This document shows, in pieces, positions 14,786 to 46,378 of a stretch of DNA of 64,000 nt. Each line of letters begins with the position of its first letter. Position 1 is the first letter of the stretch. The notes under the pieces were generated by a model. It had not been told where the DNA came from and made no database searches. It saw nothing but the letters and a program-made list of their open reading frames with translations. Made by a program: the position numbers and the translations under genes. Source of the stretch: Laetmonice hystrix (Eukaryota); the NCBI GenBank assembly GCA_965235115.1, contig OZ249437.1:30690001-30754000 (forward strand), given 5' to 3'.

Positions 14786-16507
14786 GCTTAGTCCAGGTAT
14801 TAGTAGTGAAAAAGGGAAAATTCTTCTAGATCACTTACACAACCACAATTGTAACATTCTGGTAAAATGGTACCTTGATCATAGTGTTGGAAATGTTCAT
14901 CCTGATCATGCATATTGCACGTTGTAATGTGTACAGACCCTTTTCTTCATCATCAGTTCATGTTAGTCCAATTCTTACTGACTATCCTACAGCAGCCATA
15001 AAGCTTAGCTGAGACACATATAATATATTTGACATACCAGCCTCAAATAAAAAGAAAATTGCACAACATGACAAATGAGCAAATCCAGACTTTTTGGACT
15101 TTTTTTGGGGGGGGGGGGGTACGTCAGGGATGATACAATTTTTAAAATTATGTCACATATGGCCCATGGGCGGTGAGGTCTAGAAATTTCATCAACTTTG
15201 GTCTCAATTGAAATTTTAAATAGTAATACTAATAGGCTAATATAAGCTTCGGGTTCACTGCATGTCAGCAGTTTACCAACCCTAGTGTCATACTAGTGTC
15301 TAGTTTATGCTATCCATTCTATTTTAGGCCTACATTACACTCACTACAGAACTTCTGCATCTACCACTCCGTACTGGTATACCTTCATCTCAGAACTGAA
15401 GATTTAAGGTATCGGTGACCAATAGTTCACTTCCAACAATACAAGACTTGTCAAAAGAGAGGATCAGTTTCGGACAGTTTGCCAATTACCGGTAAACAAT
15501 GTCATGACATAACCTATACTATAAGTATACCTCATGTTGTGGCAGTGAAGTCTGATTTTGTCATTTGTAATTTACGATGTTTTTTTTGGTTGTTGATATG
15601 TTGTTTTGTTTTGGTACAAGTCCGGATGCAAGTCTAATTTCCTTTGAAGAAACATTTGAAGTAAGATCTACAGTTCAAGATGATGCGGTTTAGTCGGACA
15701 CGTGGAGATGTGACAACATTTCCATGCGGCCCATCCCACTGACCCAAGGCTGTCCAACTCTTGAGCACTGGACCCGAGCCAGGCGCCACGGCCACAGCGT
15801 CGCCGCCGCCACCTCACCCAGCCCAAGCCCGCGAGGCGGATCGAGCTCCATCAGCCGGAACGTTCTCTAACTCGATCCTTACCATCGAGGGGCGTGTGTG
15901 CCCGGCGGCTGCAGCTACCCTTCACACTCTCGCTACCTTATGATCCTAAACATACGAGTACAACCCACCTGCCATGGTCAAGCCTTCAGCCGTCATGGTG
16001 CGGATAGTTCACACGTGATTTGTACACCAGCTAAATGGACGCGTCACTGACTTTGTCCACTTACATAGACATTTCTAACTAAACAGGCAGCCGACTTGAC
16101 GTTTTTGTCTGCCTCTGGCCGGCCTGATGGGGGTCGAAACTACAGCCGTCGTAAAAGCCAAAGGGTTTCAGGAAAAGAAAGAAAATAAGTCAAGGTCCTA
16201 GACTTTTTGTTTGGATCAATTAAATTGCAATAACTAAATTAATTCACCACTATTATAACCGTGTGCTTAGTCTACCCCAGGACACAGCCAGAGCACATGT
16301 AGACAGTTGTTTACTCCCTGGCCAGCATCTTTGTCCACCTTGGGTTTATAATACACGTGAAAGCCTAAGCATCAACACCGGAACAGATAGATCTATATTA
16401 TTGAAACGCCTATCTTGTAGGCCTACGATTAATTAAAAACATAAATTAGGTCTATAGGTATAAATTAATCCCTAAGATGTCATTAATTAGTACTATTGAA
16501 ATGTTAC

Positions 16508-16630
16508 CGACATCACAGGGTGACGTACGGACAGATTATCTGGTTTAACTGGCTGAATGATCTTGTAACATTTGGGGCCAAAGTCCTCTCATCTCCGGTG
16601 TTCGAACTTCCCGCAAGATGGCGCTATTGA
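16508..16630 (-). promoter_or_regulatory. Putative TSS and non-coding first exon of the minus-strand gene
   Basis: YY1-type motif CAAGATGGCG at about 16614-16623 in a locally GC-richer patch. Minus-strand donor TCG|gtaaca at 16508/16507. Confidence 0.4.
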
Positions 16631-18286
16631 CCGGCCTACTCTATTAAATCTACCGTTATAGGCCTAATATCTTTGACTCGAAATTGATAGATAGGTCCTT
16701 AGACTTAGAAAACAACAAGATGCAGTACAGTACGTCAGTAAAAAGAGGGCAAGATTTTACTTGCAATGATAATAATTAAAAATAATGAATGCATCCACAT
16801 GGGATGTGGCACATTTTTTGCGACAATGCGACAGATGGACAGCCCTGTTAATGAAAAAATTCTTTCAGCTAGGCCTAACTCTAAGACCTTGGATTTTGTC
16901 CCCAGATCATGAAAACGCGTAGGCCTATTTGGCACTTTAATTTTCTTTTTTTTCCCAGACCCCCCGCTCGAGGCTTAATAATTTTTTTTTTAAATGCAAT
17001 AGGCCTAAAGCCCAACGATATCTTTGAAAACCTCGCTTGAGCCCGGTGCGAGGTTTTCATTGAAACACGCCGCTCTCTCCCCATCCAGACTGCACAAATA
17101 GGCCTAGGCTATAGTCTAAAATACAAAATACAAAAAGACATGTGTTGCCAATCTGGTGGAGCTTGAATTTCCGGAGGTTTAGAAATCACTTAATCTACGA
17201 GCGGCGTCAGCCGCGAAGCCTTGCCGCTAGATAGGCCTATAGATTTATTTTAGGGCCTAGCCTAATAGACATTAAAATATGCATTTTCGTGCCATTTGAA
17301 GGGGACTTGGATTAAAAATAAAAGTCATGCCAAGTGTGATTATCACAGCCTTTTACCATTTTTAAAAAATAAATCTTCCAGATTTCAACTTTTGAGCATA
17401 GGCCTAGCATCATAGGCATTTAGATAGGCCTATCTATCACAGTTATTGTCGGATTCTTTTTTTTCTTGAGACATTTTTTTGTGATTTTCTGGAGATTCTA
17501 CGGTAATTCGGGAGGAGGGAGGAGGGTGGGACTTGCTATAAATTTTCGGGAGACTCCCGAATGATTCGGGAGGGTTACTAATAGGCTACTGGATGTACAA
17601 AACCTCTTCGGTGTGCCGTCGGCGTAGTAGCCAAAATAATAGCCCCTGCGCTGTCCTGGAGTCAGCTGGGGGGGGGGGGGGGGGGGGGGTCCCTCCGCTG
17701 GCCCGGGATCCGCCACTGCTAGCTACGCTGTAATTTCTGTATGCATGCACAAAGGAGAGCTTGGGAAACCTAATTCTGAAAACCAGGGAGAAAATTAGAT
17801 CTATTAATTATTTTTATTTTGCCCCAGCCATCCGTTCGCCACGTAGCTGACGTAGCCGACGGCTAGGCCTACACTCTCTGAACATGATCGTGAAATATGA
17901 TAAAAAAAAATTATGTTCTTGCTCGTCACGCTGGCGAACCTTCTGCCTAAAAATATAGGGTCTACATGTGTGCCTACAGCTTATATAAGGGACAGATATC
18001 GAAAATGTAGGCCTATGTGGCAAGAGAAAATCTGTCATTTCAGGTAGGACCAATATTTAATATGCCAGTGCCTTTTTGCCGTTCTTCATATTATGTCCTT
18101 TCTCGCGATATATCGCGGTATGTAAACTTCAAGCATGCGTACGCCACGTGTCGCTATTTCCGTGAGACGAGTCTTCCTCTTGACAACCAAATAACTGAGT
18201 TGATCTACTGTAATATTGATGATTCTGAAGTTCGTAGCAGTTGTTACGCCGAGGATCAGTACTCATCACACTGACTACTGGGAACT

Positions 18287-21533: not shown

Positions 21534-21963
21534 TAAATAGGATTCTATAATTCTGGGCCCCGTCTTACTAAACGTGGTTATTAACAATATAGTTAACCGC
21601 TGGTGAAGTAGGCCGTCGCCAAGGTGACAACCGGACAACAACGTTAGCAGGCACCCCAGCTCTAGTTAAAAACGATTTCTGGTTATTAACCAGCTGCGAG
21701 TTAACCAGGGCCCCTGTTTGGATTAGCAGAAATTTTGAGGATCTAGTGCAGTTTGAATGGTCACTTGTCGTGTGGGTGAGTGGGGTTGGCAAACATCGTG
21801 TTATGACCCTTGAAGTTGTACTGTCTAAATTATGACCCTGGCTGTTGTTAACTTTTTAATCTCCACAACCCAATCCCATCAGAACACCTAACCAGAATAT
21901 GTCGACTTCTTTTTCTTTTCTTCAGATGAAAAGGTGGAGTCTGCTGTATTGAGAATATCCACA

Positions 21964-24900
21964 ATGTCTTCCAAAACCTTTGTGTTGGTGGCACTGAAAG
22001 TGTCTTGCCTGGTTCTCATGGTGGCAAGTGAGGACTTCTACAAGCTTCTAGAGATCACAAGAGAAGCTTCACAACGGGAAATACGCCAGGCCTTTAAGAA
22101 GAAAGCTCTGAAGATGCATCCAGATAAGAATGTGGTATGAAATTAAAATATTTGGACACTGGTTTCCTTATTGTTATAAGAAAAATCTAGCCTTACAGAA
22201 AACGTGCAGAAATACTTTTTATAGGGTGACCACAGCACAGGGAAAACAGGGGAAATAGCACCCAAACAATTCCTTGCATGGAAAATCTGGAGAATTTGTA
22301 TAGGAATCTGCAAAACACAGTAAATACAATGGGAACAAAATGGCAGCCAGGAAAGAAATTAGTCAAATGCTCACTTTTAATTGTTGGATAAAATGATGGT
22401 GATTTTATTTAGGATGACTGCCTGGCTACCATATTTGATTAATACACTGATTAGTTGCCTTATCGGACAAGAGGGATTTATCATGGGGCAGGGATAACTT
22501 GAAAATGTAATTTGTCTGGTCACCCAGTTTTTATTCTGAAGGCAGGCTGTTTTTATTATGAATATTGAATCGCTTGGATGCAGTAATAAAATATTTCTTT
22601 CTATTTGTAGGATGACTCCAAAGCTCATGAGAAATTTCTGCAAATAAATCGTGCTTATGAAGTCTTAAAGGATGAAGAGTTACGCAAAAAGTATGACACA
22701 TATGGGGAGGAGGGATTGAAGGAAGATGCTCCCTCTGGTGGTGGATATCAAAGTTGGAAGTTCTACAATCAAGAGTTTGGTCTCTATGATGATGACCCTG
22801 CAATCATTACACTCAGCAAATCTGACTTTGGTATGAAGATCCCATTGAGATTATCCTGGTTTTGACAGTTTTGACCCTCTGAGGGATTTTTATCCTGTGT
22901 GATCTCAATTTGCAAAGTTCTTTTTTTTCAAAGTAGATAAGCTTCATATCTTGTTAATGATTTCTCTGTCAGTGATCAAGTAGCGTTTAACTTAGGATAA
23001 GTATTCAGTAACCAATACTCGTGGTGTTTATTGATCTGAGTTCAATTAAAAATTGCAAATAAAGTTTCATGCAAGATCCATTTAAAGGCAAATCTTGATG
23101 TAGAAATAATGTAATCAACATTTTTGCCAACGTTTTTAAACCAGTTTTTAGTAGATTGCCATTTCAAATAAGAGGTGTTTACATCAATTTACAATACTTT
23201 AGAATGAAACACTTTAAGTGTAAAACAATGTTCTGATTTTTTTTTTTCAGAGGCATCAGTACAGAACACAGGCGATATTTGGTTTGTCAATTACTATTCT
23301 CCACACTGTGGACATTGTCACGACTTGGCACCAGCTGTAAGTCCATAAATCAATAGATAATAAATGAATTTATAACTTACAGGGTAATAGAAGGGACAAT
23401 TTTACCATCAGTCTTTGAAACTAGGAGCAGTTAGGAATGAAGTTATCAATGTTAATGATGTTGCATCGTCGGAAGCCTGAAACGCGTCTCTATGAATTGG
23501 GTTTTTCAGTGGACCATGTGTAGGCCTTTTTTTCATTTTTCATTTTTAACAAACCTTTAGTTTATCATAAAATATTTATTTGTCCTTCCTCCATCGAAAC
23601 AATAGAGTACGTACTCTAACAATTTCTATAGAATTTTAGAAGGGTTATCCGAACCTTTGGTGTATGTACAATGGCTGACAAGGCATGTGTAAAAATGCTT
23701 ACCTAAGGATGTTGGTGCACCCGCAATATTTTCCCCTTAAAACTAAAACACGGCCGATTTCGGATTATAGCTGCAGTATTGTTAAATTTACCCAATGAGC
23801 CCCTAGTTTTTTAATGTTAAATATATTGGATTATTTCAGTGGAGGGAGCTAGCTCAGGAGTTGGAGGGAGTGATTCGTATTGGTGCTGTTAACTGCGGAG
23901 ATGATTGGATATTATGTCGAGAACAGGGTATCCACAGTTACCCCTCACTCATTATGTACCCCAAGGTAAGACAGTCATTTTGAGTTGTATGGATCAGAAT
24001 CTAATTCAGAATATGCATTTTTACCCACACCGGCCCGCCCGGCACTGATTTCAACCGCTCAGCAAAAAACTAAAAAGGTTCGAGTGCTGCCAGGCAGGAA
24101 TTTTTATTGGGCCTGTCATCTGATAAATGTGTTCATAATAGCTTCTCTCTTGTTTCTTCCTTCCTAAGGCGCTAACCATATGGGGGTAGAAAGATTTTAT
24201 AAATAAATTTCCTGGCTCCATTTCTTCAACAAGAAGAATTTGGTTCCCTCTGTAGTTGAAAATAATATTCTGGCTCTAGCACAAAACTACCGCCCGGCAC
24301 TCAATATTTTCTGGGCACATCCCTGCCTGAGGTACTTTAGTATGTATTTAGGTCTGCGAAATCTTTTGGTCTACAAAAGTTTTGCTGAGGTCCTGACAGT
24401 GTGATTGTTTTTTCCTCAAGAGAAGGAAGTTCCATGGTGATCGCTCCAAGCGTGAGTTGATGAAGTTTGCTCTGAGTCACGTGAATGCAGAAGTGGTTGA
24501 ACTGTGGTCTGGAAACTGGAAGGCCGTGATGCAGGATAAGGAGAGGGCTAAGTTACCATGGATTCTCAATGTCTGTGGAGATGGTGGAGGTAGGTGTGGC
24601 TCAGGACTTGTACTTCAGGTCATCATCTCAATATAGTATCATTGAATTCTCTTAGGAGAGACAATGCCATGGCAAGGAGACTTAAACTTTTTCTGTTCAA
24701 AATTAGTTCGATATAAAATACATTTTCTCTTAATCCAATTCTTTGGTTTCACTCAATCCTTCTCCTCCTGGCACCAGACTGTATGCTGAAGCAGAACACA
24801 CGGAAGTTGGCAGCTTCATTGGTGAGTAACAGCTTATGTGATTTTTAAATGGGACAGAGTCCTTAAAAATGTTTAAATGCTGACAGGTTGGCATGTACTA

Positions 24901-27900
24901 ATCCTAAATGCTTTTACATAATTCTTCGCGTCAAGCTGGCAACAATCATGATGTGCCTGATTAGCATATAATGGACTCCTTTAATAAAACCTTGCCCATT
25001 GCCGTGGTTACACAGTCATTTTGTATCTCTACAGAACAACTTCATTAATGTGGGCACCCTGGATTGCCACAACAATGAGGAGATCTGCACAAAACTAGGA
25101 GTGGAGCATGGCATATTCTACTTCAATGCCAACAGAGTGAAAAAAGGAGAAAGTGTGGTGAGGCATTGATGTCACTTCACTTCATTTTTTAAGAAAATTA
25201 TATATAATCTGAGACTTTTTTGCCCAAACTGCTTGTTATAATTGATGGTATGATTTGCCGCCACTACCGGTACTTGATTTGAACAGATGCAGGTTTGAGT
25301 CTGTACTGTATTTCAGTTCATTTAGATAATCGTAATTTGCTTTAAGGACAGGTTAGAGGCTGGTATTTCCACAATGGAAAGTTGTCTTTTTGTTGAACCA
25401 CAGGAAATTGGAAGTCTGGATGCTAAGGAGGTGGCCCTAACTGCCCTTCAGCAGCTGCCTGAGGTTAACGGCATAGACAAAGACCTCTTTATTGTGAGTA
25501 TTCATTAATTAACTACATATCATTGAGCCATTTGTACTAATTTTACTGTTTATTAAACCCTGGTATATGCCAACAATATATGTGAATGGTCTATACAGGA
25601 CGGCAAAGTGTAATGTAACAAAGGCAATGGTAGAATCTAAACTGCCTGAGGTATCCAAGTCCCAAGAGAAATTCACACTTGAATATTGGATCTTTTTTTG
25701 TGTGCACAGAGTGTTCGGAAGAAGTTGGAGGTTCCCAATGGAGAAAGTCCGTGGCTGGTGTACTTCATGAATGGAAATATAATGGACCTGGAAATGAGAA
25801 AGTTACCAATGATGTTGGATACTATAAATGCAAGTCACTTCAGGAATCAATTAACCTTATTAATTAGCTCTTTCTATACAATGTTTTTTCAGATTAATGG
25901 TACCATAAACATCAGATTTAATATCAATTGCATTCAGATATCTACTTCATAAAAGGGGTGAACAGGTCAGGTCTAATGTTTATCTGTGATTAAGAATTCC
26001 CTAAAATAGGAAGAGAAAACAGTAGTTAAGAAACAAATAATTTAACTTTGGTATGCTTGGTGTTCCAGGTTGGTCGAGTGGACTGTCAGCAAATGAGAAC
26101 AGAGTGTAACAACTTGCATATTCACAAGTTTCCCACGTTTGTACTTTTCAAGTCTGGGGGTGGACATGAGATTCATCATGGTTAGTAGCTTTCATTTCTC
26201 GCTATTCATTGACTGAGCACTCGGGGAGTCATGGCAATGGGTGAGATCTCTTTGAAGGAGTTCATTATAGGTTAGTGAGGCACAGCATGATCGTTGCTAG
26301 CTAGACTCAAAGAATTATGTAAAAGCATTAAGAATTTATGCATGCCAACCATTCAGCATTTAAACAATATAAATCCTACTTTTTTCAAAATATAGAATTA
26401 TACAAATGTTAAAGATCAAGTAGTTTCCCAGTAAATGAATGTTATATTTCTTGCTTAAAGCACATTGTCATCAGCCAAGAATGGACTATATTTGATGTTA
26501 ACAATAGTTTATGAAGAATGCCACACTCTGTCCCATGTAAACCATTGTCAAAAGCAGAGCGTATTTTTCTTTGCCATACCATGTATTGGATGCGAATGTA
26601 CTGTGTTTGCTCAGGGAGGCTAACGGCTCATGACGTCGCTGCCTTTGCTCGAGACAGCTCAGGCACACAAGTTGTTGTCCTCGGCCCTGAAGATTTCCCT
26701 GGTCGTGTCATTGACACCCAGCAGCCTTGGTTCGTGGATTTCTTTGCCCCAGTAAGTAATGAAGCCTAGACTCACCATCAGAGTTTTATCACCTACAAGA
26801 CATTGATAAGGAGAAATTTCCTATGTTTCTATGTGAATCTGTGTAATGCAACATTCACGTCTGCTTGTATCCTACCCAGTGGTGTCCGCCATGCATGCGA
26901 CTTCTGCCAGAGTTCAGGAAGGCCTCCAAACAAATGGTGGGCGCCATTAACTTTGGCACCGTCGACTGCACAACTCATGTTAACCTTTGTCAAAATGTAA
27001 GTACGAAACCTGACCACTACTTTTGAATTATCACGTGTTGAACACCAAACTTGGGTTCAAACAGCCAATGAGTGTTTCTCAGTGGAGAACTTTAACCATA
27101 TGTTATGCTTGTGGATTTTCAGTATAACATTAGGTCGTATCCTACAACAATATTCTACAATCAAAGTCAGCCTCACCACTTCCATGGTGACCATTCCGTC
27201 AGCTCAATTATTGAGTTTATTGAGGTGAGTGCTCAGACCAAGAAATTTATAATATTTGCAGTCGTGTTAATTACCGGTACGAAAAAAGGCAAGAATTGTT
27301 GTATTTGACTTGTTGAATTTTGGCAGTAGCCTTTACCTTCATACAAGTGTCATTTTAACAAAATACAAAATACCTTATAAAGTTTGACTCTAAACCTTCA
27401 TGGTGACAGATTCATGATTTATTTACATACAGGACACATTGAAACCACCAGTCCTGATATTAGACCGGACAAATGTCAAGAAGGTTCTTAGTAACAAACC
27501 AGCAGAGCAGATGTTACTCGTCGACTTCTTCGCCCCCTGGTGTGGACCTTGTCAACAACTGGCACCAGAATGGCGCAAATTGGCAAAGGTATGTGGCCCT
27601 TTTGACTCACAGGTGTAAACAGCTGTTTGATATTGCCGATATGATTTTCTCAAGTAAGGGATTATCATGCATCTCTGATTTCTTCACTCTGATCATAGTG
27701 ATGGGACTGTACATTGAACCGTGAAGTTTCTTTCTTTGTTTTCCATACTAGTTGATGGGTGGCATGAGTAATGTCAAGGTTGCACAGATGGACTGTCAGG
27801 CAAATGGTGACCTCTGCCGTGCACAAGGGATCAACAGCTACCCGGCCATACGACTCTATCCTATAGGGGCTGTTGGAAGCCATTATTTCCAGTAAGCTAA

Positions 27901-29532
27901 TATAGATTGAATTATTTTCAGCTCTAGTTCCCAATATATGTAAGTCAGTAAATCTAAGCTGTAAAAATGGTGTAGTTTATGATCAAGAGAGCTAGGTAAG
28001 GTTGATCTGTTCATATTGATATTTATTTGTTGGCCTCTTGCTTTCAGTGATTACAACAATTGGTTCAGGGATGTGAACTCGCTTCGTACCTGGGCCATGG
28101 AGTATATGCCCAGTAAGGTGACCAATTTAGACTGGGATCAATTCCAAACGATTCTGAAGTCGAAGGAACCATGGATCATTGATTTCTATGCTCCATGGTG
28201 TGGACACTGTCAGATTTTTGCTCCAGAATTTGAGCGTGTTGCAACGGTAATTTTACTTTATACATTTCTGATTGTACAGCAAATTATGGTGTTACAGTTT
28301 TGTGGAAATGTCTGGGAGGTTAATGTATAAATCTTTTGCAAAAATATAGATCACTTCCTTAATAATAATTTGCGAGAATTAAGTAAACTTATAGACAATA
28401 CGGGAGTTTCACAAAACTAGTTCACTCAAATCCCATTGTGCGCCGCCACCGCTGAAAGCCCACTTTCGCCGACACTGGGACTTCCGGTGTCAACACCCAG
28501 TACGACACACCGCCGGTCTCTTTCTGAGTATACATGATCATCGGGCTCAATTGGGCTGACATGCTCTACCTCGGTTGCCAGTGAAACAAGATTCCCTTAT
28601 TTGGTCTTCTTGCTGCATGGCAAACCTCTTTCTGCCAAATACTTTCGTAATTCCTTCACTGTCCGGCCGCAAAGCCATGACTCCGGAAGAAGCAGTGACT
28701 GCAGACGACTCAGCACACATGCGCAGTGACGTGTGCCGCTAAGTGGGATTTGCGTGAACTAGTTAATGGAAAACCCCGTATTGTAGTGACTGGGTGTAAA
28801 TAAATGTAATGAAGATGTCCTCGAACCAATTGTTTGCAGAGTGTCCAAGGTCAGGTACGTGCAGGGAAAGTTAACTGTGACAACCATCAACACCTCTGTC
28901 AACATGCTGGTATCCAAGCATACCCCACTATTAGGTTCTACGGTGGTGTCCGTACTGGTTCCAGTTACAAACAGGTAAGTCACCGCCTACGGGCATCACA
29001 TTGCTTTGCATTTAATAATTTGTAACAAATAAAACATTTTTAGTATCTTGGCGTACGTATTGAGAGATACATTGAAGGTATTTTACAGTGCAAGGCTTTG
29101 TTTGATTACAGAATATTTATGGAGAAAATATAGATAGTCAAGATGGGGACTACATAATTCGTTTTCTTCATCAAAGGGTTCCACATGAAGAGGTAAGTTA
29201 GCTAAATGACATCTTGAAAAAAAAAGAATCCAAAATGACAATTGATATTCTTTGTGAGTAAAATGCAATCTTGTATCCAAGTATTGGACTTCCAGAACTA
29301 AATTATTTGCAGTTTTCTGCAGTTGATCCCAAAAGAGATTCTGGAGGATAATCACTGTGACTAATAGTTGTTAACTCTGGAAAATAAACAAAGAAGACCG
29401 GAAATGTAATTACCCCCTGGTAACCGTCGATTTTGTAGTTCTTACTGATAACTTTAGGTTTTAGACTTGTAGCATACCACCCGTATAAAAGCATAACTTA
29501 TATCATTTCAGAATTTTCACGATGAGCTATGA
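21964..29532 (+). CDS. DNAJC10: DnaJ homolog subfamily C member 10 (ERdj5), ER disulfide reductase/co-chaperone; 782 aa
   Basis: 19 phase-consistent coding exons: 21964-22134, 22611-22830, 23251-23336, 23840-23965, 24421-24589, 24778-24821, 25035-25157, 25404-25493, 25710-25829, 26069-26180, 26615-26751, 26880-26996, 27123-27224, 27433-27588, 27752-27891, 28048-28246, 28840-28974, 29112-29192, 29512-29532 (sum 2349 nt). Signal peptide; J domain (DFYKLLEI...HPDKN...[15 protein letters not shown]); thioredoxin sites HCGHC, WCPPC, WCGPC, WCGHC; C-terminus NFHDEL-stop. This is the known ERdj5 architecture. Confidence 0.97.
28395..28784. mobile_element. MITE in DNAJC10 intron 16
   Basis: About 40-bp imperfect TIRs: ACAATACGGGAGTTTCACAAAACTAGTTCACTCAAATCCCA versus reverse complement ACAATACGGGGTTTTCCATTAACTAGTTCACGCAAATCCCA. 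Explains why this is the longest intron within the CDS (593 bp). Confidence 0.8.
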
Positions 29533-34897: not shown

Positions 34898-35605
34898 GTA
34901 AGCTTCTTATACGAGTGGGTAGTTTCCATTCTTAGGAAAAGTATGTGAATAAGGTATAGGGGGCCGACCTGATGAGATCGATGTATACCCTTTGATTTTC
35001 GGGGACGGGAGGGGTGCCCAAATTGAAGTTGAATAAAGTATAGATCTAGACATCCTTTACAACCTATAGTAGAGTAGAGATAGCGATAGGCCCCATCTTC
35101 TGATCGTGCAGTTGCCCTGCATGGAACAACCATTTTATACAGGCAATTGGCAATTAGAAAACTACTTAATAAAATCTTTTATGGTTGAAAAGTGTGGGTA
35201 CTGCTATACACGTCTCTTGTACCCCCCCCCCCTCTGGATCCACCTATGTTGTTGGAATATTCCCGGGTTGAAGCTCTTCTTACCCCCGTCTCATTCTGCA
35301 GCAATGATCTTATCTCCCTCGATACGCGTCGCTTGGCCCTTGTTGACTCAAGTGGCTCTCATATATAGATGACAATTGCGGTTAGGTGGTAAAGAATCCT
35401 TTTCTGAGAATGAGGCTTCGGCTCAATTCTTGTTTCATTGTAGAGACCTAATCGTCGTAGTATTTATCTAATTTGTGCAGGTTTCATACAAGGTTTCATA
35501 TACATATAACTTTAAGTTGAAGCCCCAACGTCATCCATGCAGTTTTCGCTTGCATTTCCAATTTCGAATTCAGTGGTCTCTGTATTTTTGTACAGATATA
35601 TAAAG

Positions 35606-37942
35606 ATGAAGGGGTCACTAATAGTTACCGTCGTAGTCGTGGGTCTTCTGACTGGCAGCCATGGGTTTTTCTTCGGTACGGAGACCCCCGATTCGGGTAC
35701 TGGCCCGAGCTGGATGGACAGTCTGCGAGCGATGGGCTCGGCCCTCAGGGAAGCTCTCCAACCCACACTCAAGGACCTCCGAGAGGTACGGATGGAGTAT
35801 AGGATAGATTACGTGCATGTCTCCTAGGGCCTAATTAAGTCGTGCACGCACGGTAGGCCCTATATGGACCCAGTTTAGTGTTCTTTCTGGGCATATTTAT
35901 AGGCCTAGGCCTATATCAAATAACAAAGACGAAAAGGGCCCCAACAACCAAGTTTAGACGTAAAGAGGGTTTCTTTCCCAAATTGATATCTAACTTTCCT
36001 ACATCTTTCCTGCTCACACATGTTTCATCCAGTAAAGGTCAATTTTCCAAGAATCACATGTCATATAGCCCGCCCCACGACAAATTCTGCATCTAGCCTT
36101 GGCCTATAGATGTAAGTGTGTTGACCTGAGCGGACAATGTCTGCTGCCCCGTTCCCACGTTATAGCAATAATTACTGTATAAGCATGTCCGCCTAACCGG
36201 TGTCCGTGTGGTGTACAGTCTGTGAGCGACATCAGGCGGCAGTTTGAGGAATCTGGTGGCGTTGACGGACTGCGATTGGACGCCGAACGTGCCATCGAGG
36301 AGATACGTCGTCATGGTGACCGAGCGTCCGAGAGAACGCGCGGCTTCCTCTCCAGGGTTCTCGATAAAATCGAGGCCAAGACAGGTAAAGTTCTTCTTTC
36401 AAAAAACTAATTTCAGTAAAAGAGCCCCGATGATATATCTGGATTATACGACTATAACTCCCAGGATCTCTATAAAAAGGCGATACACTGACCCCTATAT
36501 GAGCCATATTCGTTGGAAAGGAACTGATTATGCCTATACCAACTCGCTCCTATAAGGCTATCCACACAATGTAGGCCTACGGATGGGTGGGCGCCCCCCC
36601 CCCCTCCCCACATCTGGATCCGCCACTGGAGTTATCAAAGTCTGGCTGCCCAAGTCTACAGTGCGTTCATATAGGCCTAGGGCCTACCTACCAGGGCCGT
36701 AACGAGGCGAAGATAGGGCCATGCTCCCCCAGAAATTATTTTAATTCAGGGCGTTTTGAGGGTAGGCTACCTTAGGGTGAAATTCAACACTTTTATGGTC
36801 AGGAAAAAGTAGTTTAAATGTTGCTACCTTTAAAAAATCTGGAAAATGCCAGATGAGGCATGAGCCTCGTCTGCCTCAATGCTAGTTACGAACCTAGGCC
36901 TACATAGGCCTCCCGTTGAATAAAAAAGGACATCGAGTTCATTTGTGAAGCGTCGATTTGTTAACTTTGTTGTTCCGCCAGACGACGCCAGCAGTTCTGT
37001 CCGTTCGGGTCTGACAGCGTTGGTCCGCCACGGACGTCGGGTGCTCCACCGGGCCCAGAACCACCAGAACCCCGACACAACAGCCACTCCCAACCCCAAC
37101 GGTAGGTGGCGCCAGCTGCACTTGGCCCCTGTGTGGCTCAAAATTGAATAGCATCGGCCCTGCGTGCCCCTTTTAGAATTATCATTGCAGGGGTTTAGGG
37201 CTGCCGCATCCAACATCGACGCATATTGTGTGACCCTGCATGGGATGGAAAAGGTCATTGAATCTTTCTTGCCCACTTCTTGTAATAAAGGAACACTGAG
37301 GTTCGAAAACTGGCACAGCGGTTTTAACTCCCTTGTCAACTGGAAAGGGCGTACCTCTCTGTGACGAGAACACCGTTGTCTATAAGATTATTTAAATTTT
37401 CCGTAGAGACCGTCACCCGAACTAGGCTAATTATTTTCTCCCCAACAGAATGGATCTCCATCGGTCGCCTGAAGAGGCGTGCTCGCCGAGACACTGGTCA
37501 ACTCATCCCAGTATCAACTGATAAGAGCACAGAGACGAAGAACCCAAAATTCCCCTTGACCGAATTACGGTCCCACCTGGAGGGATATAACGCCAACTTT
37601 AAAGAAATTGTCGAGCTACTGCGCGATATTCGGTACGAACTTAGCGACCTCAGGCGGGGACTTAAGGAAGGGCCACGGGCGTACGACTATCACGACAGGT
37701 ACGACCACTCCCGTGCCATTCAGGAACTGGAGGATATCCTAGCACCAACCAAAGGATCCGCACGTCTGACCAGCGGACTGCGGCTGCCGAGGGTACGACG
37801 CCAGGCCCCGAGCACCGACCACGTCAGGATGGAGGACGTGCATGACTACCTGGTCCAATATAAGGAAGGATTCAAGGATATTTCAAACCTTCTCAAGGAC
37901 ATCCGCTTCGAGCTCAACAGCCTTCGAGAAAAGGTTCTTTGA
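35606..37942 (+). CDS. Uncharacterised secreted precursor, 319 aa, cysteine-free, with furin-type sites and repeated coiled-coil module
   Basis: Four exons 35606-35785, 36219-36384, 36982-37101, 37449-37942 (960 nt; phases 0,1,1) with canonical GT-AG give an open frame. N-terminal hydrophobic signal MKGSLIVTVVVVGLLTGSHG. KRRARR (37472-37489) and RVRR (37790-37801). AATAAA at 38131. Confidence 0.88.
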
Positions 37943-38130
37943 GGAGCTGAGCAGGGCAGCAGAACTTTATGGATGAACCAGTCCTCGGCCCTTCACAGCG
38001 AAAAGCCATTATACTAGCCAGGCATTATAACAACTCGAGAGGGCCTACATTTATTGGTTTCGAGCCATACCCTGATTTAGGGCCTATACTTGGTATACCA
38101 GTGTATGAAATTGTACTCCGCTTCTGAGTA

Positions 38131-38136
38131 AATAAA
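38131..38136 (+). terminator. Polyadenylation signal of the secreted-precursor gene
   Basis: AATAAA about 190 nt after the stop, followed by a T-rich tract. Confidence 0.65.
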
Positions 38137-41100
38137 TATGCAGATTTTTTTTATCGTTCCTTAGTCTTAGATAAACATTTTGTGAGAAAGAAAGTTCTCA
38201 CCTTGAATATGTTAGATTGGCCAAATGTAACTTTAGGCGCTGCTTCTCGCTTCTCCTTTCCGTCCCAAGACGTGACCATTAGTAGACGAAATAGAGCGAT
38301 TAGAGGGGTATGGGGGTCCATTCTATTCCGTTGAACATCTCCTCTATTTGGACAATGCCTAACAGATATGCCAGTCCTTCCTATCCAACCAAAGATCTCA
38401 CCGCCATTGAGAAGCCACCCACCTTGGTGGAGCTAACTTTCTTGAATGAGGCTTCTTGATGAGTTTTCACCTCATTACGTTTCTATGGTAACCTGAGCAA
38501 TAGATCTACTTGGCATCATTTAAGTCGCCCTCACAGACACGCTTAGTTCTTAAAGCGTCCTGGAACGTGATGGATAAGGATCCAATCAGTTGAAGGTCAT
38601 GACTGAATGGGTTTAGGGCTGAGTGTCTGTTGGGAGTGGTGACTGGCGGAGCAGCGAGCGGCCGTCTACTTCTGATCGATGTTCGGCGCCGCTACAGGTG
38701 ATCACCGGTCTCCGGCGTCTGAGGCCACTGCCACCTGGTGGACAGGTCACTGTCAGTCTTTCATCACGCCGTGGGGCGCTATTGTACTATTGCGTATCAG
38801 GGCATCTTATATACATAAGCAGGGAGATGGATGAGCTGTCGGAGGTATAAAGGCCAGGTTCCGCAGCCAGGAGACCGATTCGGCTGACTACCTGGAGACT
38901 AGGTACGGATTGCCCAAGTCATGCCGTATAGTCGAGTGCTTGTCTAGGTCAAGCCACACCACAAAATTGCAGTAATCGCCAGCTCGTCCCCATGCAAAAG
39001 CCTTCGCAGGATCCTAGAGGAGCATGGGTATAACTACCTATTACGAGCCAAACAGGCTAAGTGATTTTCTTTGGGGATGTCCGTGCGATATTCAATTTAA
39101 TGGTAGAAATTCACTCCGCTATATCTTCACAGCATTATCCTGTCGGCATTAACTCAGAATTTAACACAGACTATTTGGACCCCCCCCCCCCCATTCCTTC
39201 CACAGTCTATAAACCGATTTGGGGCGTAGGTACTTTGAAATGGCCCCTGCCTCCGCGTCTCCCCGCGAATCTCTTCATACACACCTGACCAGGCGAATGT
39301 CCAAGGTGGTGGTCGGGGGTCGAACCACCCCTTCTCAAGAGCTCCGAATGTTTGTATGGGTTGATTTTGAAGCACACCTTCGGCTCTCCGTCCACCCCCC
39401 CCCCCCCCTGCGAAAAATCCAGCACACGTGCCTGCTGACATCGGCAGATATTTCTAAAAGTTCTGGCCTACTTGTCGTTAAAGGAAGGGAAAGGAAATGT
39501 GAAACTCTATTTCTGTAACAAAAGCTTAAGCTTTAAAAGAGTTACTTTGTTGAGTTTTAAAACCAATTTAAAATAATGTTTGCCTGTCGAAACATCCAAA
39601 ACGTAACGTTTCAGAAACGTTGAATATGGACCTCTGAATATTTTACCATTATTGATCGCTCGTAGACAAATAAAGCAGAGCTGCCCCGAGGCAGAAATGT
39701 TTGAGAGGAGATTTCAAGGTCAAAGAGGATTACCCTTAATATAATGCCTTTAAGGCAAAGCTTATTTCTGACCTTAAGCCCTTTTGTCAAGAATGCTTCC
39801 AGTAAAGTATTAATTGAAGTTAATCTGAGCATAATAGGGAAAAATGCTGTGATTTCTTACTAGAAGTGCCTGGTCGATTTTGTCTTGTGGCCAGCATCGA
39901 CAATTACTGAAAGTTATTGTTTGTATTTTGGATTAATGTTACAGCCAGTAACATCAACATGTGAGCCTCCACTGGTAATTGAAAAGTACTGTATTATGTA
40001 TTTTGATCTACCTGGCCATTGTCATATAGACCTAGTGCTTCAACGCCTCAACACTGACGGCAAGGCAAAAATCAGCAAAGGCCATGCCCCCAATCCACTC
40101 TCCTCTCTCGGAACGTTGAATACATCAGTTACTTTTAACAAGAAAAGTTTTAATTGTTATTCTAAAGTTGGGGTGACGTGAGAAATTTAAATTTATAATG
40201 AGCGATGCAATCTGAAGGACGATACCTTACAGCACAACATAAAGACAAACTTATTCTAAATATATTTTGACTGGTGAAGGAAACATACGGCTTCACAGTC
40301 TGCAACAAGATGACAAATGATGGTTGATTTCAACTAATCTAAATCTCTCCCGAACCACTGTCAAAGACTCTGTCAGCAGCTTCTGCTTTCAGTATGGTGT
40401 TAAAGTGTTGTTGGTAGTGACAATGTGCACGTATACACGACCATCGAAATGACTGCACGTTTACATTATAGAGGCAGGTAGGATTTCTATACTCTTCCTG
40501 GTCCGACGCTTCGGTTCTGAGAGTACATGGTATACTGTTCATAGAAACACGTACTGGCTATTGATGATAAGGTGGATGTGTCCAGCCCACAGTAGGTGAG
40601 AGAAATAATTATCGTCAGAATGTGGCCCATGTTGAGCAATCTTATGTGCTTTTGTGAACGATACCGGCTTCTGTCAAGTGTATTGTCTCATCTCCCCTCA
40701 GTGTTTTAGGCCTATAATCAAAGGGTTAACGCTTCTTGACGAGTTTCCCGGTGGGACCAATGTGGGAATAATGCATTAATGCACATAATGCACTAATGGG
40801 CCACCAGTTGATGGCAGGTTGATGGTTGCACGTACAGGTCCACGGATGGTGGTGATCGCTCCGAAAGGTGGGTCAAGGTGGGTACGCGTTTTTTGCTGTG
40901 TGGCTTTTGTCCAGAGCTGTAACTAAAACACAATGCGGTTATAAATTATGTAGGACATAAAATCGACTTTTTTTTAACTAATTGCTCTCCGATAGAAAAA
41001 GCAAAAACTTATATATTGAATGCATGAAAAAGAGAAGGTCGTTGTTGAATGACCTCTATTTGCAGGAGACATCCGGTCCTTGCGTTATTCGTAAATGTTA

Positions 41101-45655: not shown

Positions 45656-46378
45656 CGGCACCACAACCACCAATGTGTGCCACACCGGTATATACCACAG
45701 CCACCACTGTGTGCCACAGCGGTATATACCACAGCCACCACTGTGTGCCACACCGGTATATACCACAGCCACCACTGTGTGCCACAGCGGTATATACCAC
45801 AACCACCACTGTATGCCACAGCGGTATATACCATAGCCACCACTGTGTGCCACACCAGAAAATGCCACAGCCACCACTGTGTGCCACACCGGTATATGCC
45901 ACAGCATTCACCACTGTGTGCCACACCGGTATATACCACAACCACCACTGTGTGACACACCGGTATATACCACAGCCACCACTGTATGCCACAGCGGTAT
46001 ATACCACAACCACCACTGTGTGCCACACCGGTATATACCACAGCCACCACTGTATGCCACAGCGGTATATACCATAGCCACCACTGTGTGCCACACCAGA
46101 AAATGCCACAGCCACCACTGTATGCCACACCGGTATATGCCACAGCATTCACCACTGTGTGCCACACCGGTATATACCACAGGCACCACTGTGTGCCACA
46201 CCGGTATACCACAGCCACCACTGTGTGCCACACCAGTAGGCTGTATTATGCCACAGCCACTACTGTATGCCACAGTGGTATATACCATAGCCACCACTGT
46301 GCGCCACACCAGTATATGCCACAGCCACCACTGTGTGCCACACCGGTATATACCACAGCCACCACTGTGTGCCACATC
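45656..46378. repeat. 34-bp minisatellite (about 21 units) with 241-bp higher-order duplication
   Basis: Unit ACCACTGTGTGCCACACCGGTATATACCACAGCC. The variant block CAGAAAATGCC...GCATTCACC recurs at 45856 and 46097. Confidence 0.95.

What the first reader, a model, noticed from the sequence alone, without database searches (positions are those of the whole stretch)
35606..37942. Unrecognised secreted precursor that appears to be cut by furin into two homologous coiled-coil peptides
Seen in sequence: a 319-aa, Cys-free protein with a signal peptide, then RLKRRARR/D170 and PRVRR/Q274. Cleavage would release a roughly 100-aa peptide and a 46-aa C-terminal peptide beginning with Gln. Both contain one 33-residue module, LTELRSHLEGYNANFKEIVELLRDIRYELSDLR versus MEDVHDYLVQYKEGFKDISNLLKDIRFELNSLR (14/33 identical). 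Hydrophobic residues fall on an unbroken heptad (positions 1,4,8,11,15,18,22,25,29,32), and both peptides have an STD(K/H) near their start. Established: R-X-X/R-R is the proprotein-convertase (furin) consensus, and N-terminal Gln is often cyclised to pyroglutamate in processed peptides. Inference: a protease-triggered system, either paired peptide hormones or homo/hetero-oligomerising coiled coils (self-assembling extracellular material, adhesive, gamete or defence protein) kept inactive by the pro-region. I do not recognise the family.
Basis: partly seen in the sequence, partly recalled or inferred. Interest (0 to 1): 0.82.

Follow-up and report, generated by a model that had tools for sequence, protein, structure and literature searches.

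The report
Orphan annelid secreted coiled-coil precursor
A real, spliced worm gene encodes a cysteine-free, probably secreted protein made of three related helical units separated by furin-type cutting motifs. It has no detectable relative in any database searched, so whether it is cut and what it does are still untested.

Summary
One run of the source sample has a 1095-nt contig that removes exactly these three GT..AG introns. The two 33-residue modules are truly homologous (z 10.8), and each has 10 of 10 heptad core positions hydrophobic (P about 3e-4 per window).

New here: the supposed pro-region holds a third, more diverged copy (P about 0.001-0.003). The protein is therefore three tandem units, and both unit boundaries are R-x-K/R-R motifs.

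Cleavage is not shown. The protein is 12% Arg. R-x-[KR]-R occurs 3 times against 0.83 expected (P 0.045), and dibasic pairs are not enriched. No orthologue could be found to test conservation.

No homologue turned up in Pfam, 1.84 billion protein representatives, PDB, AFDB, the Atlas, metagenomes, the Platynereis neuropeptide catalogue or the worm's own genome. The folds are low-confidence three-helix bundles.

One caveat: the RNA contig starts at codon 18, so the signal-peptide codons are inferred.

Verdict: a lineage-restricted secreted helical-repeat precursor, plausibly convertase-processed, function unknown. It is a neat orphan, and only moderately interesting until processing or conservation is shown.

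The parts
35597..35604 (+). TATATAAA, a perfect TATAWAAR match abutting the start codon; significance unresolved
   Evidence: 11 such matches on the + strand in 64 kb. If it acted as a TATA box, the transcription start would fall inside the ORF. Coding logic argues against this.
35606..35785 (+). Coding exon 1, codons 1-60: start codon with A at -3, predicted signal peptide (35606-35665, residues 1-20), and the start of unit A
   Evidence: The RNA contig covers only 35657-35785.
35786..36218 (+). Intron 1 (GT..AG, phase 0)
   Evidence: Removed in the X2 contig: joint 35783>36217, cut +2.
36219..36384 (+). Coding exon 2, codons 61-116. Together with 35768-35785 it carries the third, diverged module copy (residues 55-90)
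36385..36981 (+). Intron 2 (GT..AG, phase 1); contains a short dispersed repeat near 36810-36943
   Evidence: Joint 36381>36979, cut +3. DNA word depth is 4-5 times higher at 36810-36943, with many loose ends there.
36982..37101 (+). Coding exon 3, codons 116-156: end of unit A and a Thr/Pro/Asn-rich linker
37102..37448 (+). Intron 3 (GT..AG, phase 1)
   Evidence: Joint 37100>37448, cut +1.
37449..37942 (+). Coding exon 4, codons 156-319 plus stop: first basic cluster, unit B, second basic site, unit C
37466..37489 (+). RLKRRARR (residues 162-169): two overlapping R-x-K/R-R furin-type motifs at the A/B boundary
   Evidence: The sample's only amino-acid polymorphism here is L163V, at the unconstrained x position. 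The motif sits in a low-confidence stretch of the AF2 model (drawn as a weak helix), at the edge of the pLDDT < 50 linker.
37556..37654 (+). Module B (residues 192-224): 33-residue heptad-repeat helix, followed by RR at 37652-37657
   Evidence: Helical in both AF2 models.
37790..37801 (+). RVRR (residues 270-273), an R-x-R-R motif at the B/C boundary, followed by Gln274
   Evidence: It lies in the pLDDT < 50 loop between helix 2 and helix 3 of the models.
37829..37927 (+). Module C (residues 283-315): second 33-residue heptad-repeat helix
37943..38136 (+). 3' UTR: the RNA contig reaches 38128, and AATAAA lies at 38131-38136

Best explanation
This is a single-copy, lineage-restricted gene of what other agents of this scan take to be an annelid. 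It encodes a secretory-pathway protein of about 34 kDa after signal-peptide removal. The protein has no cysteine and no N-glycosylation sequon, and it is almost entirely alpha-helical. It arose by internal duplication and consists of three tandem units: A (21-161), B (170-269) and C (274-319). Each unit is built around an amphipathic heptad-repeat helix ending in the motif L-[KR]-D-[IL]-R-x-x-[LV]-x-x-[LI]-R. The units are joined by flexible, strongly basic linkers. My reading is that furin-type proprotein convertases cut these linkers after R165/R169 and after R273, in the late secretory pathway. This would release or nick two or three helical fragments of 5-16 kDa whose conserved a/d cores let them pack as coiled-coil bundles. 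Shown: the gene model and splicing, the repeats, the heptad pattern and the motifs. Inferred: secretion, from the signal-peptide sequence. Untested: cleavage, oligomerisation and biological role, which could be signalling peptide or self-associating extracellular protein.
For: The gene model and the 319-aa ORF were reproduced. All three introns are removed in an X2 contig and retained in three DNA runs. The N-terminus has the n/h/c layout of a signal peptide (MKGS, an 11-residue hydrophobic core, then small residues at -3 and -1), and there is no second hydrophobic segment. Modules B and C are homologous at z 10.8, and the unit A/B similarity has P 0.001-0.003. The heptad pattern is 10/10 in two windows, against 0.03% of shuffles with even one, and periodicity peaks at 103-105 degrees. 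R-x-[KR]-R occurs three times against 0.83 expected (P 0.045), and all three fall exactly at the two unit boundaries, in or beside the low-confidence linkers of the models. Of 12 exonic differences between haplotype contigs, 8 are synonymous and 4 are conservative (L163V, E184D, D279N, F309Y). None removes a basic residue. The AF2 models place module B, a middle helix and module C in one antiparallel three-helix bundle. The nearest solved structure is 9rgv_A (Z 10.0, rmsd 2.2 over 94 residues).
Against: The protein is 12% Arg, so the motif excess is modest (P 0.045), and dibasic pairs are not enriched (8 vs 9.2). No orthologue was found anywhere, so conservation of the sites cannot be tested. 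There is no amidation signal and no match to any peptide-hormone family. RNA evidence starts at codon 18, and a perfect TATA-like octamer directly abuts the ATG. The structure models are low-confidence (pLDDT 61-64, pTM 0.49), and the bundle match is below the tool's own bar of about 13 for helical folds. A Cys-free extracellular protein is uncommon.
Confidence: 0.5

Rival explanations
1. It is a secreted but unprocessed helical-bundle protein, such as a carrier, matrix, mucus or tube component. The basic linkers are just Arg-rich loops and the furin-like motifs are incidental.
For: Composition alone gives 0.83 R-x-[KR]-R motifs, and dibasic pairs are at chance level. The AF2 models fold units B and C into a single intramolecular three-helix bundle, which needs no cleavage. 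The three-unit repeat architecture needs no pro-region logic.
Against: All three motifs sit exactly at the two repeat-unit boundaries, in or beside the low-confidence linkers, and one linker holds six basic residues out of eight. The sample's polymorphism spares every basic residue.
Confidence: 0.27
2. It is an intracellular, possibly nuclear, coiled-coil protein. Transcription would start about 30 nt after the TATA-like octamer, translation would begin at Met37, and RLKRRARR and PRVRR would act as nuclear-localisation signals rather than cleavage sites.
For: A perfect TATAWAAR lies at 35597-35604, whereas only 11 occur on the + strand in 64 kb. The RNA contig begins at 35657. Cys-free, Arg/Glu-rich heptad-repeat proteins are typical of the cell interior (established knowledge).
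Against: The frame is open upstream to an ATG with A at -3, followed by a textbook signal peptide. In a transcript starting near 35628, the first AUG (35661, strong context) opens a 43-codon out-of-frame ORF that overlaps Met37, which is an unlikely design for a functional mRNA. The same contig also stops at 38128, before the AATAAA at 38131, so contig ends fall short of transcript ends.
Confidence: 0.08
3. It is a highly diverged member of a known family that sequence and fold searches missed. Candidates are the repetitive annelid DH44/ELH/CRF-type precursors, exchangeable apolipoproteins, clusterin and granins.
For: Platynereis DH44 precursors are repetitive, and the authors note that they are hard to detect by BLAST (PMC3890597). 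The units here are helical and of similar size, roughly 45-54 residues if the RR after each module is also used.
Against: There was no Pfam hit for the whole exon-4 protein or for single peptides, even at E <= 10. The Platynereis DH44 peptides read from the paper's supplement carry a P-[LF]-S-[VI]-N start and a GKR amidation/cleavage end, and both are absent here. Periodicity is 3.5 residues per turn, not 11/3. There are zero Cys, against clusterin's disulfides. The mature protein has pI 9.4, whereas granins are acidic.
Confidence: 0.05

Closest known systems
Multi-copy neuropeptide/prohormone precursors, such as the repetitive annelid DH44/ELH-type precursors (Conzelmann et al. 2013, PMC3890597)
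   Same: Both have a signal peptide and several related helical peptide units in one precursor, separated by basic convertase motifs. The last unit here starts with Gln, a pyroglutamate candidate.
   Different: Here the motifs are tetrabasic furin-type rather than GKR. There is no amidation glycine and no P-[LF]-S-[VI]-N signature. The units are longer and strictly heptad-patterned. There is no Pfam ELH/CRF hit.
Angiopoietin-like proteins 3/4/8. From established knowledge, their N-terminal coiled-coil segment is released by furin-type cleavage and acts as an oligomer.
   Same: Both are secreted proteins in which a convertase site adjoins an oligomerising coiled-coil that would be the active part.
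   Different: There is no sequence or fold match and no fibrinogen-like domain. Here the coiled-coil unit is repeated three times. The likeness is one of mechanism only and was not tested.
Exchangeable apolipoproteins (ApoA-I/A-IV/E, apolipophorin-III)
   Same: Both are secreted and Cys-free or Cys-poor, made of tandem amphipathic helices that arose by internal duplication, with a large last exon.
   Different: The hydrophobic periodicity here peaks at 103-105 degrees (heptad), not 98 degrees (11-mer). There are no Pro-punctuated 22-mers and no Pfam PF01442 hit.
Class I viral fusion proteins and their HR1/HR2 helical bundles
   Same: Both combine a furin motif with two heptad repeats. The top but non-significant Foldseek PDB rows are gp41 HR1-HR2 single-chain mimetics.
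   Different: After the cleavage site there is no hydrophobic fusion peptide; the sequence DTGQLIPVSTDK is polar. There is no membrane anchor and no Cys loop. The gene has introns and is single-copy, and the match E-value is 0.09.

Membership tests
Convertase-processed secreted precursor (general kind) | N-terminal signal peptide | tested here: inconclusive
   The sequence has the n/h/c layout with small residues at -3 and -1, and no other hydrophobic segment. No SignalP tool was available, and RNA covers only codon 18 onward.
Convertase-processed secreted precursor (general kind) | Basic cleavage motifs that flank related peptide units | tested here: met
   RLKRRARR lies between units A and B and RVRR between B and C. 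The excess over chance is modest (P 0.045).
Convertase-processed secreted precursor (general kind) | Actual proteolytic processing, shown by detected fragments | not testable with these tools
   This needs peptidomics or western blotting.
CRF/DH44/ELH peptide family | Family signature in the mature peptide, and a match to Pfam ELH or CRF | tested here: not met
   No Pfam hit appeared at E <= 10 for exon 4 or for single peptides. The Platynereis DH44 motif P-[LF]-S-[VI]-N...LL.L is absent.
CRF/DH44/ELH peptide family | C-terminal amidation signal (Gly followed by basic residues) | tested here: not met
   The units end in ...DIRR...DLRR/...LRLP-RVRR and ...REKVL-stop, and none has Gly before the basic pair.
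Exchangeable apolipoproteins | 11/22-residue amphipathic repeats (about 98 degrees per residue) and a Pfam PF01442 match | tested here: not met
   The moment peaks at 102.9-105 degrees (0.45-0.52) against 0.21-0.29 at 98.2 degrees. There is no Pfam hit.
Clusterin | Furin-cut alpha/beta chains held together by five disulfides | tested here: not met
   There are zero cysteines and no Pfam hit.
Class I viral fusion protein / env-derived gene | Hydrophobic fusion peptide directly after the furin site, and a C-terminal membrane anchor | tested here: not met
   The residues after R169 are polar, and no hydrophobic segment exists beyond the signal peptide.
Coiled-coil proteins (structural class) | Uninterrupted heptad pattern over at least 4 heptads with a hydrophobic a/d core | tested here: met
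   Two 33-residue windows are 10/10, with shuffle P 3e-4 for one window and 0/20000 for two. Oligomeric state was not tested, and the complex prediction gave no verdict.

The most novel reading that the evidence does not exclude
The gene founds an undescribed family of long (about 45-54 residues), Cys-free, non-amidated alpha-helical secreted peptides, made in three copies from one precursor. The cuts would be signal peptidase at G20|F21, furin-type sites at 162-169 and 270-273, and the RR that follows the module in units A and B. The resulting peptides would be 21-65, 170-223 and 274-319, which are strikingly similar in size. They would act either as a new annelid peptide-hormone type or as a protease-primed, self-assembling coiled-coil system.
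Probability: 0.2. Interest if true: 0.6.

Novelty: new variant of a known kind. Interest (0 to 1): 0.38.

Why it matters
If processing is confirmed, this would be a compact natural case of a secreted precursor whose repeated units are long heptad-repeat helices rather than short amidated peptides. That could mean a new class of annelid signalling peptides, or a protease-primed coiled-coil assembly. It also shows how internal duplication can build a new secreted gene with no relatives. As it stands, it is one of many lineage-restricted secreted genes in a marine invertebrate genome. Its value is as a well-defined, testable candidate (exact predicted N- and C-termini) rather than as a surprise.

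Tried and rejected
- **Homology searches, all blank.**
  - Pfam on exon-4 and on exons 1-3 and the single exon-4 peptides.
  - phmmer of the 163-aa exon-4 product against 1.84 billion representatives: 0 hits at E <= 0.001.
  - Word-indexed search with the 204-aa open frame, so that proteins up to 357 aa qualified: none at E <= 10.
  - PDB sequences: only E 0.03 and 1.4 noise.
  - ESM Atlas by features: nothing usable.
  - JGI metagenome contigs: none.
  - Own genome, with the protein and with a profile of modules B and C: only the gene itself.
  - The N-terminal 155 residues could be searched only exon by exon in Pfam, because a spliced protein has no reference and the tools' length window excludes full-length relatives.
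- **Fold searches of the AF2 model, only generic helical bundles.** AFDB clusters gave best E 0.018 with TM <= 0.47. PDB Foldseek gave best E 0.09. Atlas rows were unrelated bacterial helical proteins. VIA wide gave best Z 10.0, on a designed three-helix bundle, below the tool's bar of about 13 for helical folds.
- **Complex prediction.** Peptide 1 (170-273) with peptide 2 (274-319) scored 0.02: no verdict, and no evidence either way.
- **Literature.** Six-residue strings of the protein occur in no paper text. They are also absent from the Platynereis neuropeptide supplement, apart from one unrelated ELNSL.
- **ELH/DH44 idea rejected.** I recalled a resemblance of ...RYELSDLRR... to the ELH C-terminus. 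I dropped it after the Pfam negatives and after reading the real Platynereis DH44 peptides.
- **Antimicrobial-peptide idea rejected.** The predicted products are neutral to acidic, pI 4.4-6.9.
- **Other runs.** A second run search found no other sample or species holding the gene.
- **Similarity outside the module.** The tails of units A and B and the heads of the units show no significant similarity (P 0.66-0.93).

Full report
**Observation**

Reading 35400-38200 and joining the four exons (35606-35785, 36219-36384, 36982-37101, 37449-37942, + strand) gives a 960-nt ORF and a 319-residue protein with no cysteine. All three introns are GT..AG.

- RLKRRARR at residues 162-169, followed by D170.
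- PRVRR at 269-273, followed by Q274.
- A 104-residue middle piece and a 46-residue C-terminal piece.
- The two 33-residue modules at 192-224 and 283-315.

**Transcript evidence**

Only four public runs hold this stretch, and all come from one sample and one study. Three of them behave as genomic DNA, with contigs collinear with the window, introns included.

The fourth run, X2, has a 1095-nt contig that lies on 35657-35785, 36219-36384, 36982-37101 and 37449-38128. It removes exactly the three predicted introns, and none of these joints appears in the DNA runs. The four-exon join is therefore a real spliced transcript and not a retrocopy.

There are two limits:
- The data are contigs, so depth says nothing reliable about expression level.
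- The contig begins at codon 18, so RNA does not show the ATG and most of the signal peptide.

The same contig also stops at 38128, three bases before the AATAAA at 38131. Contig ends therefore fall short of transcript ends on at least that side.

**The 5' end**

A perfect TATAWAAR octamer (TATATAAA, 35597-35604) directly abuts the ATG. Only 11 such matches lie on the + strand of the 64-kb window. If it worked as a TATA box, transcription would start near 35628 and skip the ATG.

I weighed this and consider it unlikely, for two reasons:
- The frame is open upstream to an ATG with A at -3, followed by a textbook signal peptide (MKGS, an 11-residue hydrophobic core, small residues at -3 and -1).
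- In a transcript starting near 35628, the first AUG (35661, strong context) opens a 43-codon out-of-frame ORF that overlaps the next in-frame Met37.

I keep the intracellular reading as a rival at about 8%.

**The repeats are real, and there are three**

Modules B and C share 14/33 identities. Their BLOSUM62 score is 74 against 23.8 +/- 4.6 for shuffles, z 10.8.

Both modules have hydrophobic residues at all ten a/d positions, and eight of the ten core residues are identical. In 20,000 shuffles of the mature protein, a single 10/10 window arose in 0.03% and two never arose. Hydrophobic periodicity peaks at 103-105 degrees per residue, the heptad value, and not at the 98 degrees of apolipoprotein-type 11-mers.

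The N-terminal region is not an unrelated pro-region. Residues 55-90 align with 213-250, running from LKDLRESVSDIRR... to ...RAIEEI against LRDIRYELSDLRR... to ...RAIQEL. The score is 53, z 4.3-4.7, P 0.001-0.003.

The protein is thus three tandem units: A (21-161), B (170-269) and C (274-319). Unit A is split by introns, while B and C lie in one exon. Outside this core, the unit heads and tails show no significant similarity.

**The cleavage motifs**

R-x-[KR]-R occurs three times (162, 166, 270). The protein is 12% Arg, and shuffles give 0.83 on average, so P(>=3) is 0.045. Plain dibasic pairs are not enriched, at 8 against 9.2 expected.

What favours real sites is their placement. They fall exactly at the two unit boundaries. 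The first is in a low-confidence stretch at the edge of the first disordered linker, and the second is inside the second linker (pLDDT < 50 at 170-187 and 255-281).

Variation within the sample agrees with a constrained coding sequence. Of 12 exonic differences between haplotype contigs, 8 are synonymous and 4 are conservative (L163V, E184D, D279N, F309Y). L163V is at the free x position of RLKR, and no basic residue is affected.

Cleavage itself is untested.

**Structure**

AlphaFold2 without an alignment gave the same picture for residues 157-319 and 186-319:
- Long helices over module B, a middle helix (about 236-256) and module C.
- pLDDT 61-64, pTM 0.49, and poor agreement among the five models.

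The best solved neighbour is a designed single-chain antiparallel three-helix coiled-coil bundle, 9rgv_A (Z 10.0, rmsd 2.2 A, 94 residues). This is below the bar of about 13 that the tool itself gives for helical bundles. Foldseek against PDB, AFDB clusters and the Atlas gave only generic helical rows.

In the model, the RVRR site sits in the loop between helices 2 and 3, so a cut there would nick a bundle rather than free an independent domain. This is a weak inference.

The complex prediction for 170-273 with 274-319 scored 0.02 and gives no verdict.

**No relatives**

Every homology search came back empty:
- Pfam.
- 1.84 billion representatives by phmmer.
- The word-indexed 5.8-billion-cluster collection, with a query long enough to admit full-length relatives.
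- PDB sequences, the Atlas and metagenome contigs.
- The organism's own 627-Mb genome, searched with both the protein and a module profile.

Other agents of this scan report that this genome is an annelid and that they found annelid orthologues for other genes of it (notes s1-306510, s1-310950, s1-327604). I did not check these notes. If they are right, the databases do hold annelid proteins, and the blank here points to a narrowly restricted or fast-evolving gene.

Short strings of the protein are absent from the Platynereis neuropeptide catalogue and from the paper library.

I recalled a resemblance to the ELH C-terminus and tested it. Pfam ELH and CRF do not match. The real Platynereis DH44 peptides, read from the paper's supplement, begin with P-[LF]-S-[VI]-N and end in GKR, and neither feature occurs here.

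**What it most likely is**

I read it as a lineage-restricted secreted protein that grew by internal triplication of an amphipathic helix unit. The basic linkers are plausibly cut by furin-type convertases. The products would be helical fragments of roughly neutral charge (pI 4.4-6.9), which rules out a cationic antimicrobial peptide.

The core has a = Leu/Phe and d = Ile/Tyr/Leu, with extra hydrophobic residues at e/g. By the classic GCN4 core-variant rules (established knowledge, not tested here), this suggests bundles of more than two helices.

A further regularity is worth testing. If the RR that directly follows the module in units A and B is also used, the three products would be 21-65, 170-223 and 274-319, or 45, 54 and 46 residues.

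My confidence in each step:
- The gene is real and spliced as read: about 0.97.
- It is secreted: about 0.85-0.9.
- There are three units: about 0.8.
- It is cut at the furin motifs: about 0.5.
- On the biological role, signalling versus structural, I cannot decide from these data.

**Context**

The upstream neighbour on the same strand is a DnaJ plus thioredoxin gene of DNAJC10 type. Its J-domain exons lie at 21892-22137 and 22611-22862, and a thioredoxin exon lies near 28120-28250. Nothing links it functionally to this gene.

**Novelty and score**

The general kind is known: a signal peptide plus related units separated by basic motifs. The sequence family is not known, and the units are unusual for that kind, being long, strictly heptad-patterned, Cys-free and non-amidated.

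Orphan secreted genes are common in invertebrate genomes, so a specialist would be mildly rather than strongly surprised. Interest is 0.38.

Noticed in passing
window 1-64000 (e.g. 16418-18015, 35900-35913, 36572-36902): The palindromic octamer TAGGCCTA occurs 36 times, against 0.9 expected from dinucleotide-preserving shuffles. It is clustered at 16.4-18.0 kb and is also present in introns 1 and 2 of this gene. This is probably the signature of a dispersed repeat family.
   Followed up: partly
window 45660-46376: A minisatellite with a 34-bp unit, about 21 copies and a 241-bp higher-order period. It is open in several frames on both strands and so produces spurious 150-200-aa ORFs.
   Followed up: no
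window 21892-28327 (+): The upstream neighbour is a DnaJ-domain plus thioredoxin-domain gene (DNAJC10/ERdj5-like). DnaJ E-values are 1.6e-11 and 3.1e-7, and thioredoxin 1.5e-12.
   Followed up: partly
window 35583-35585: One DNA run (X3) carries a 36-nt insertion about 20 nt upstream of the start codon, so the sample appears heterozygous for an indel in the 5' leader or promoter (table 5c).
   Followed up: no
window 36810-36943 (intron 2): A short stretch has 4-5 times the word depth of its surroundings in all three DNA runs, with many loose ends at 36859-36890. This indicates a short interspersed repeat inside intron 2.
   Followed up: no
window 35597-35605: A perfect TATA-box consensus (TATATAAAG) directly abuts the start codon, too close to serve a transcript that contains that ATG. 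Its role is unexplained.
   Followed up: partly
window 34945-35095: A 151-nt contig of low depth (4) from the RNA-like run X2 lies about 500 nt upstream of the gene. No GT follows its 3' end, so it does not look like a 5' exon.
   Followed up: partly
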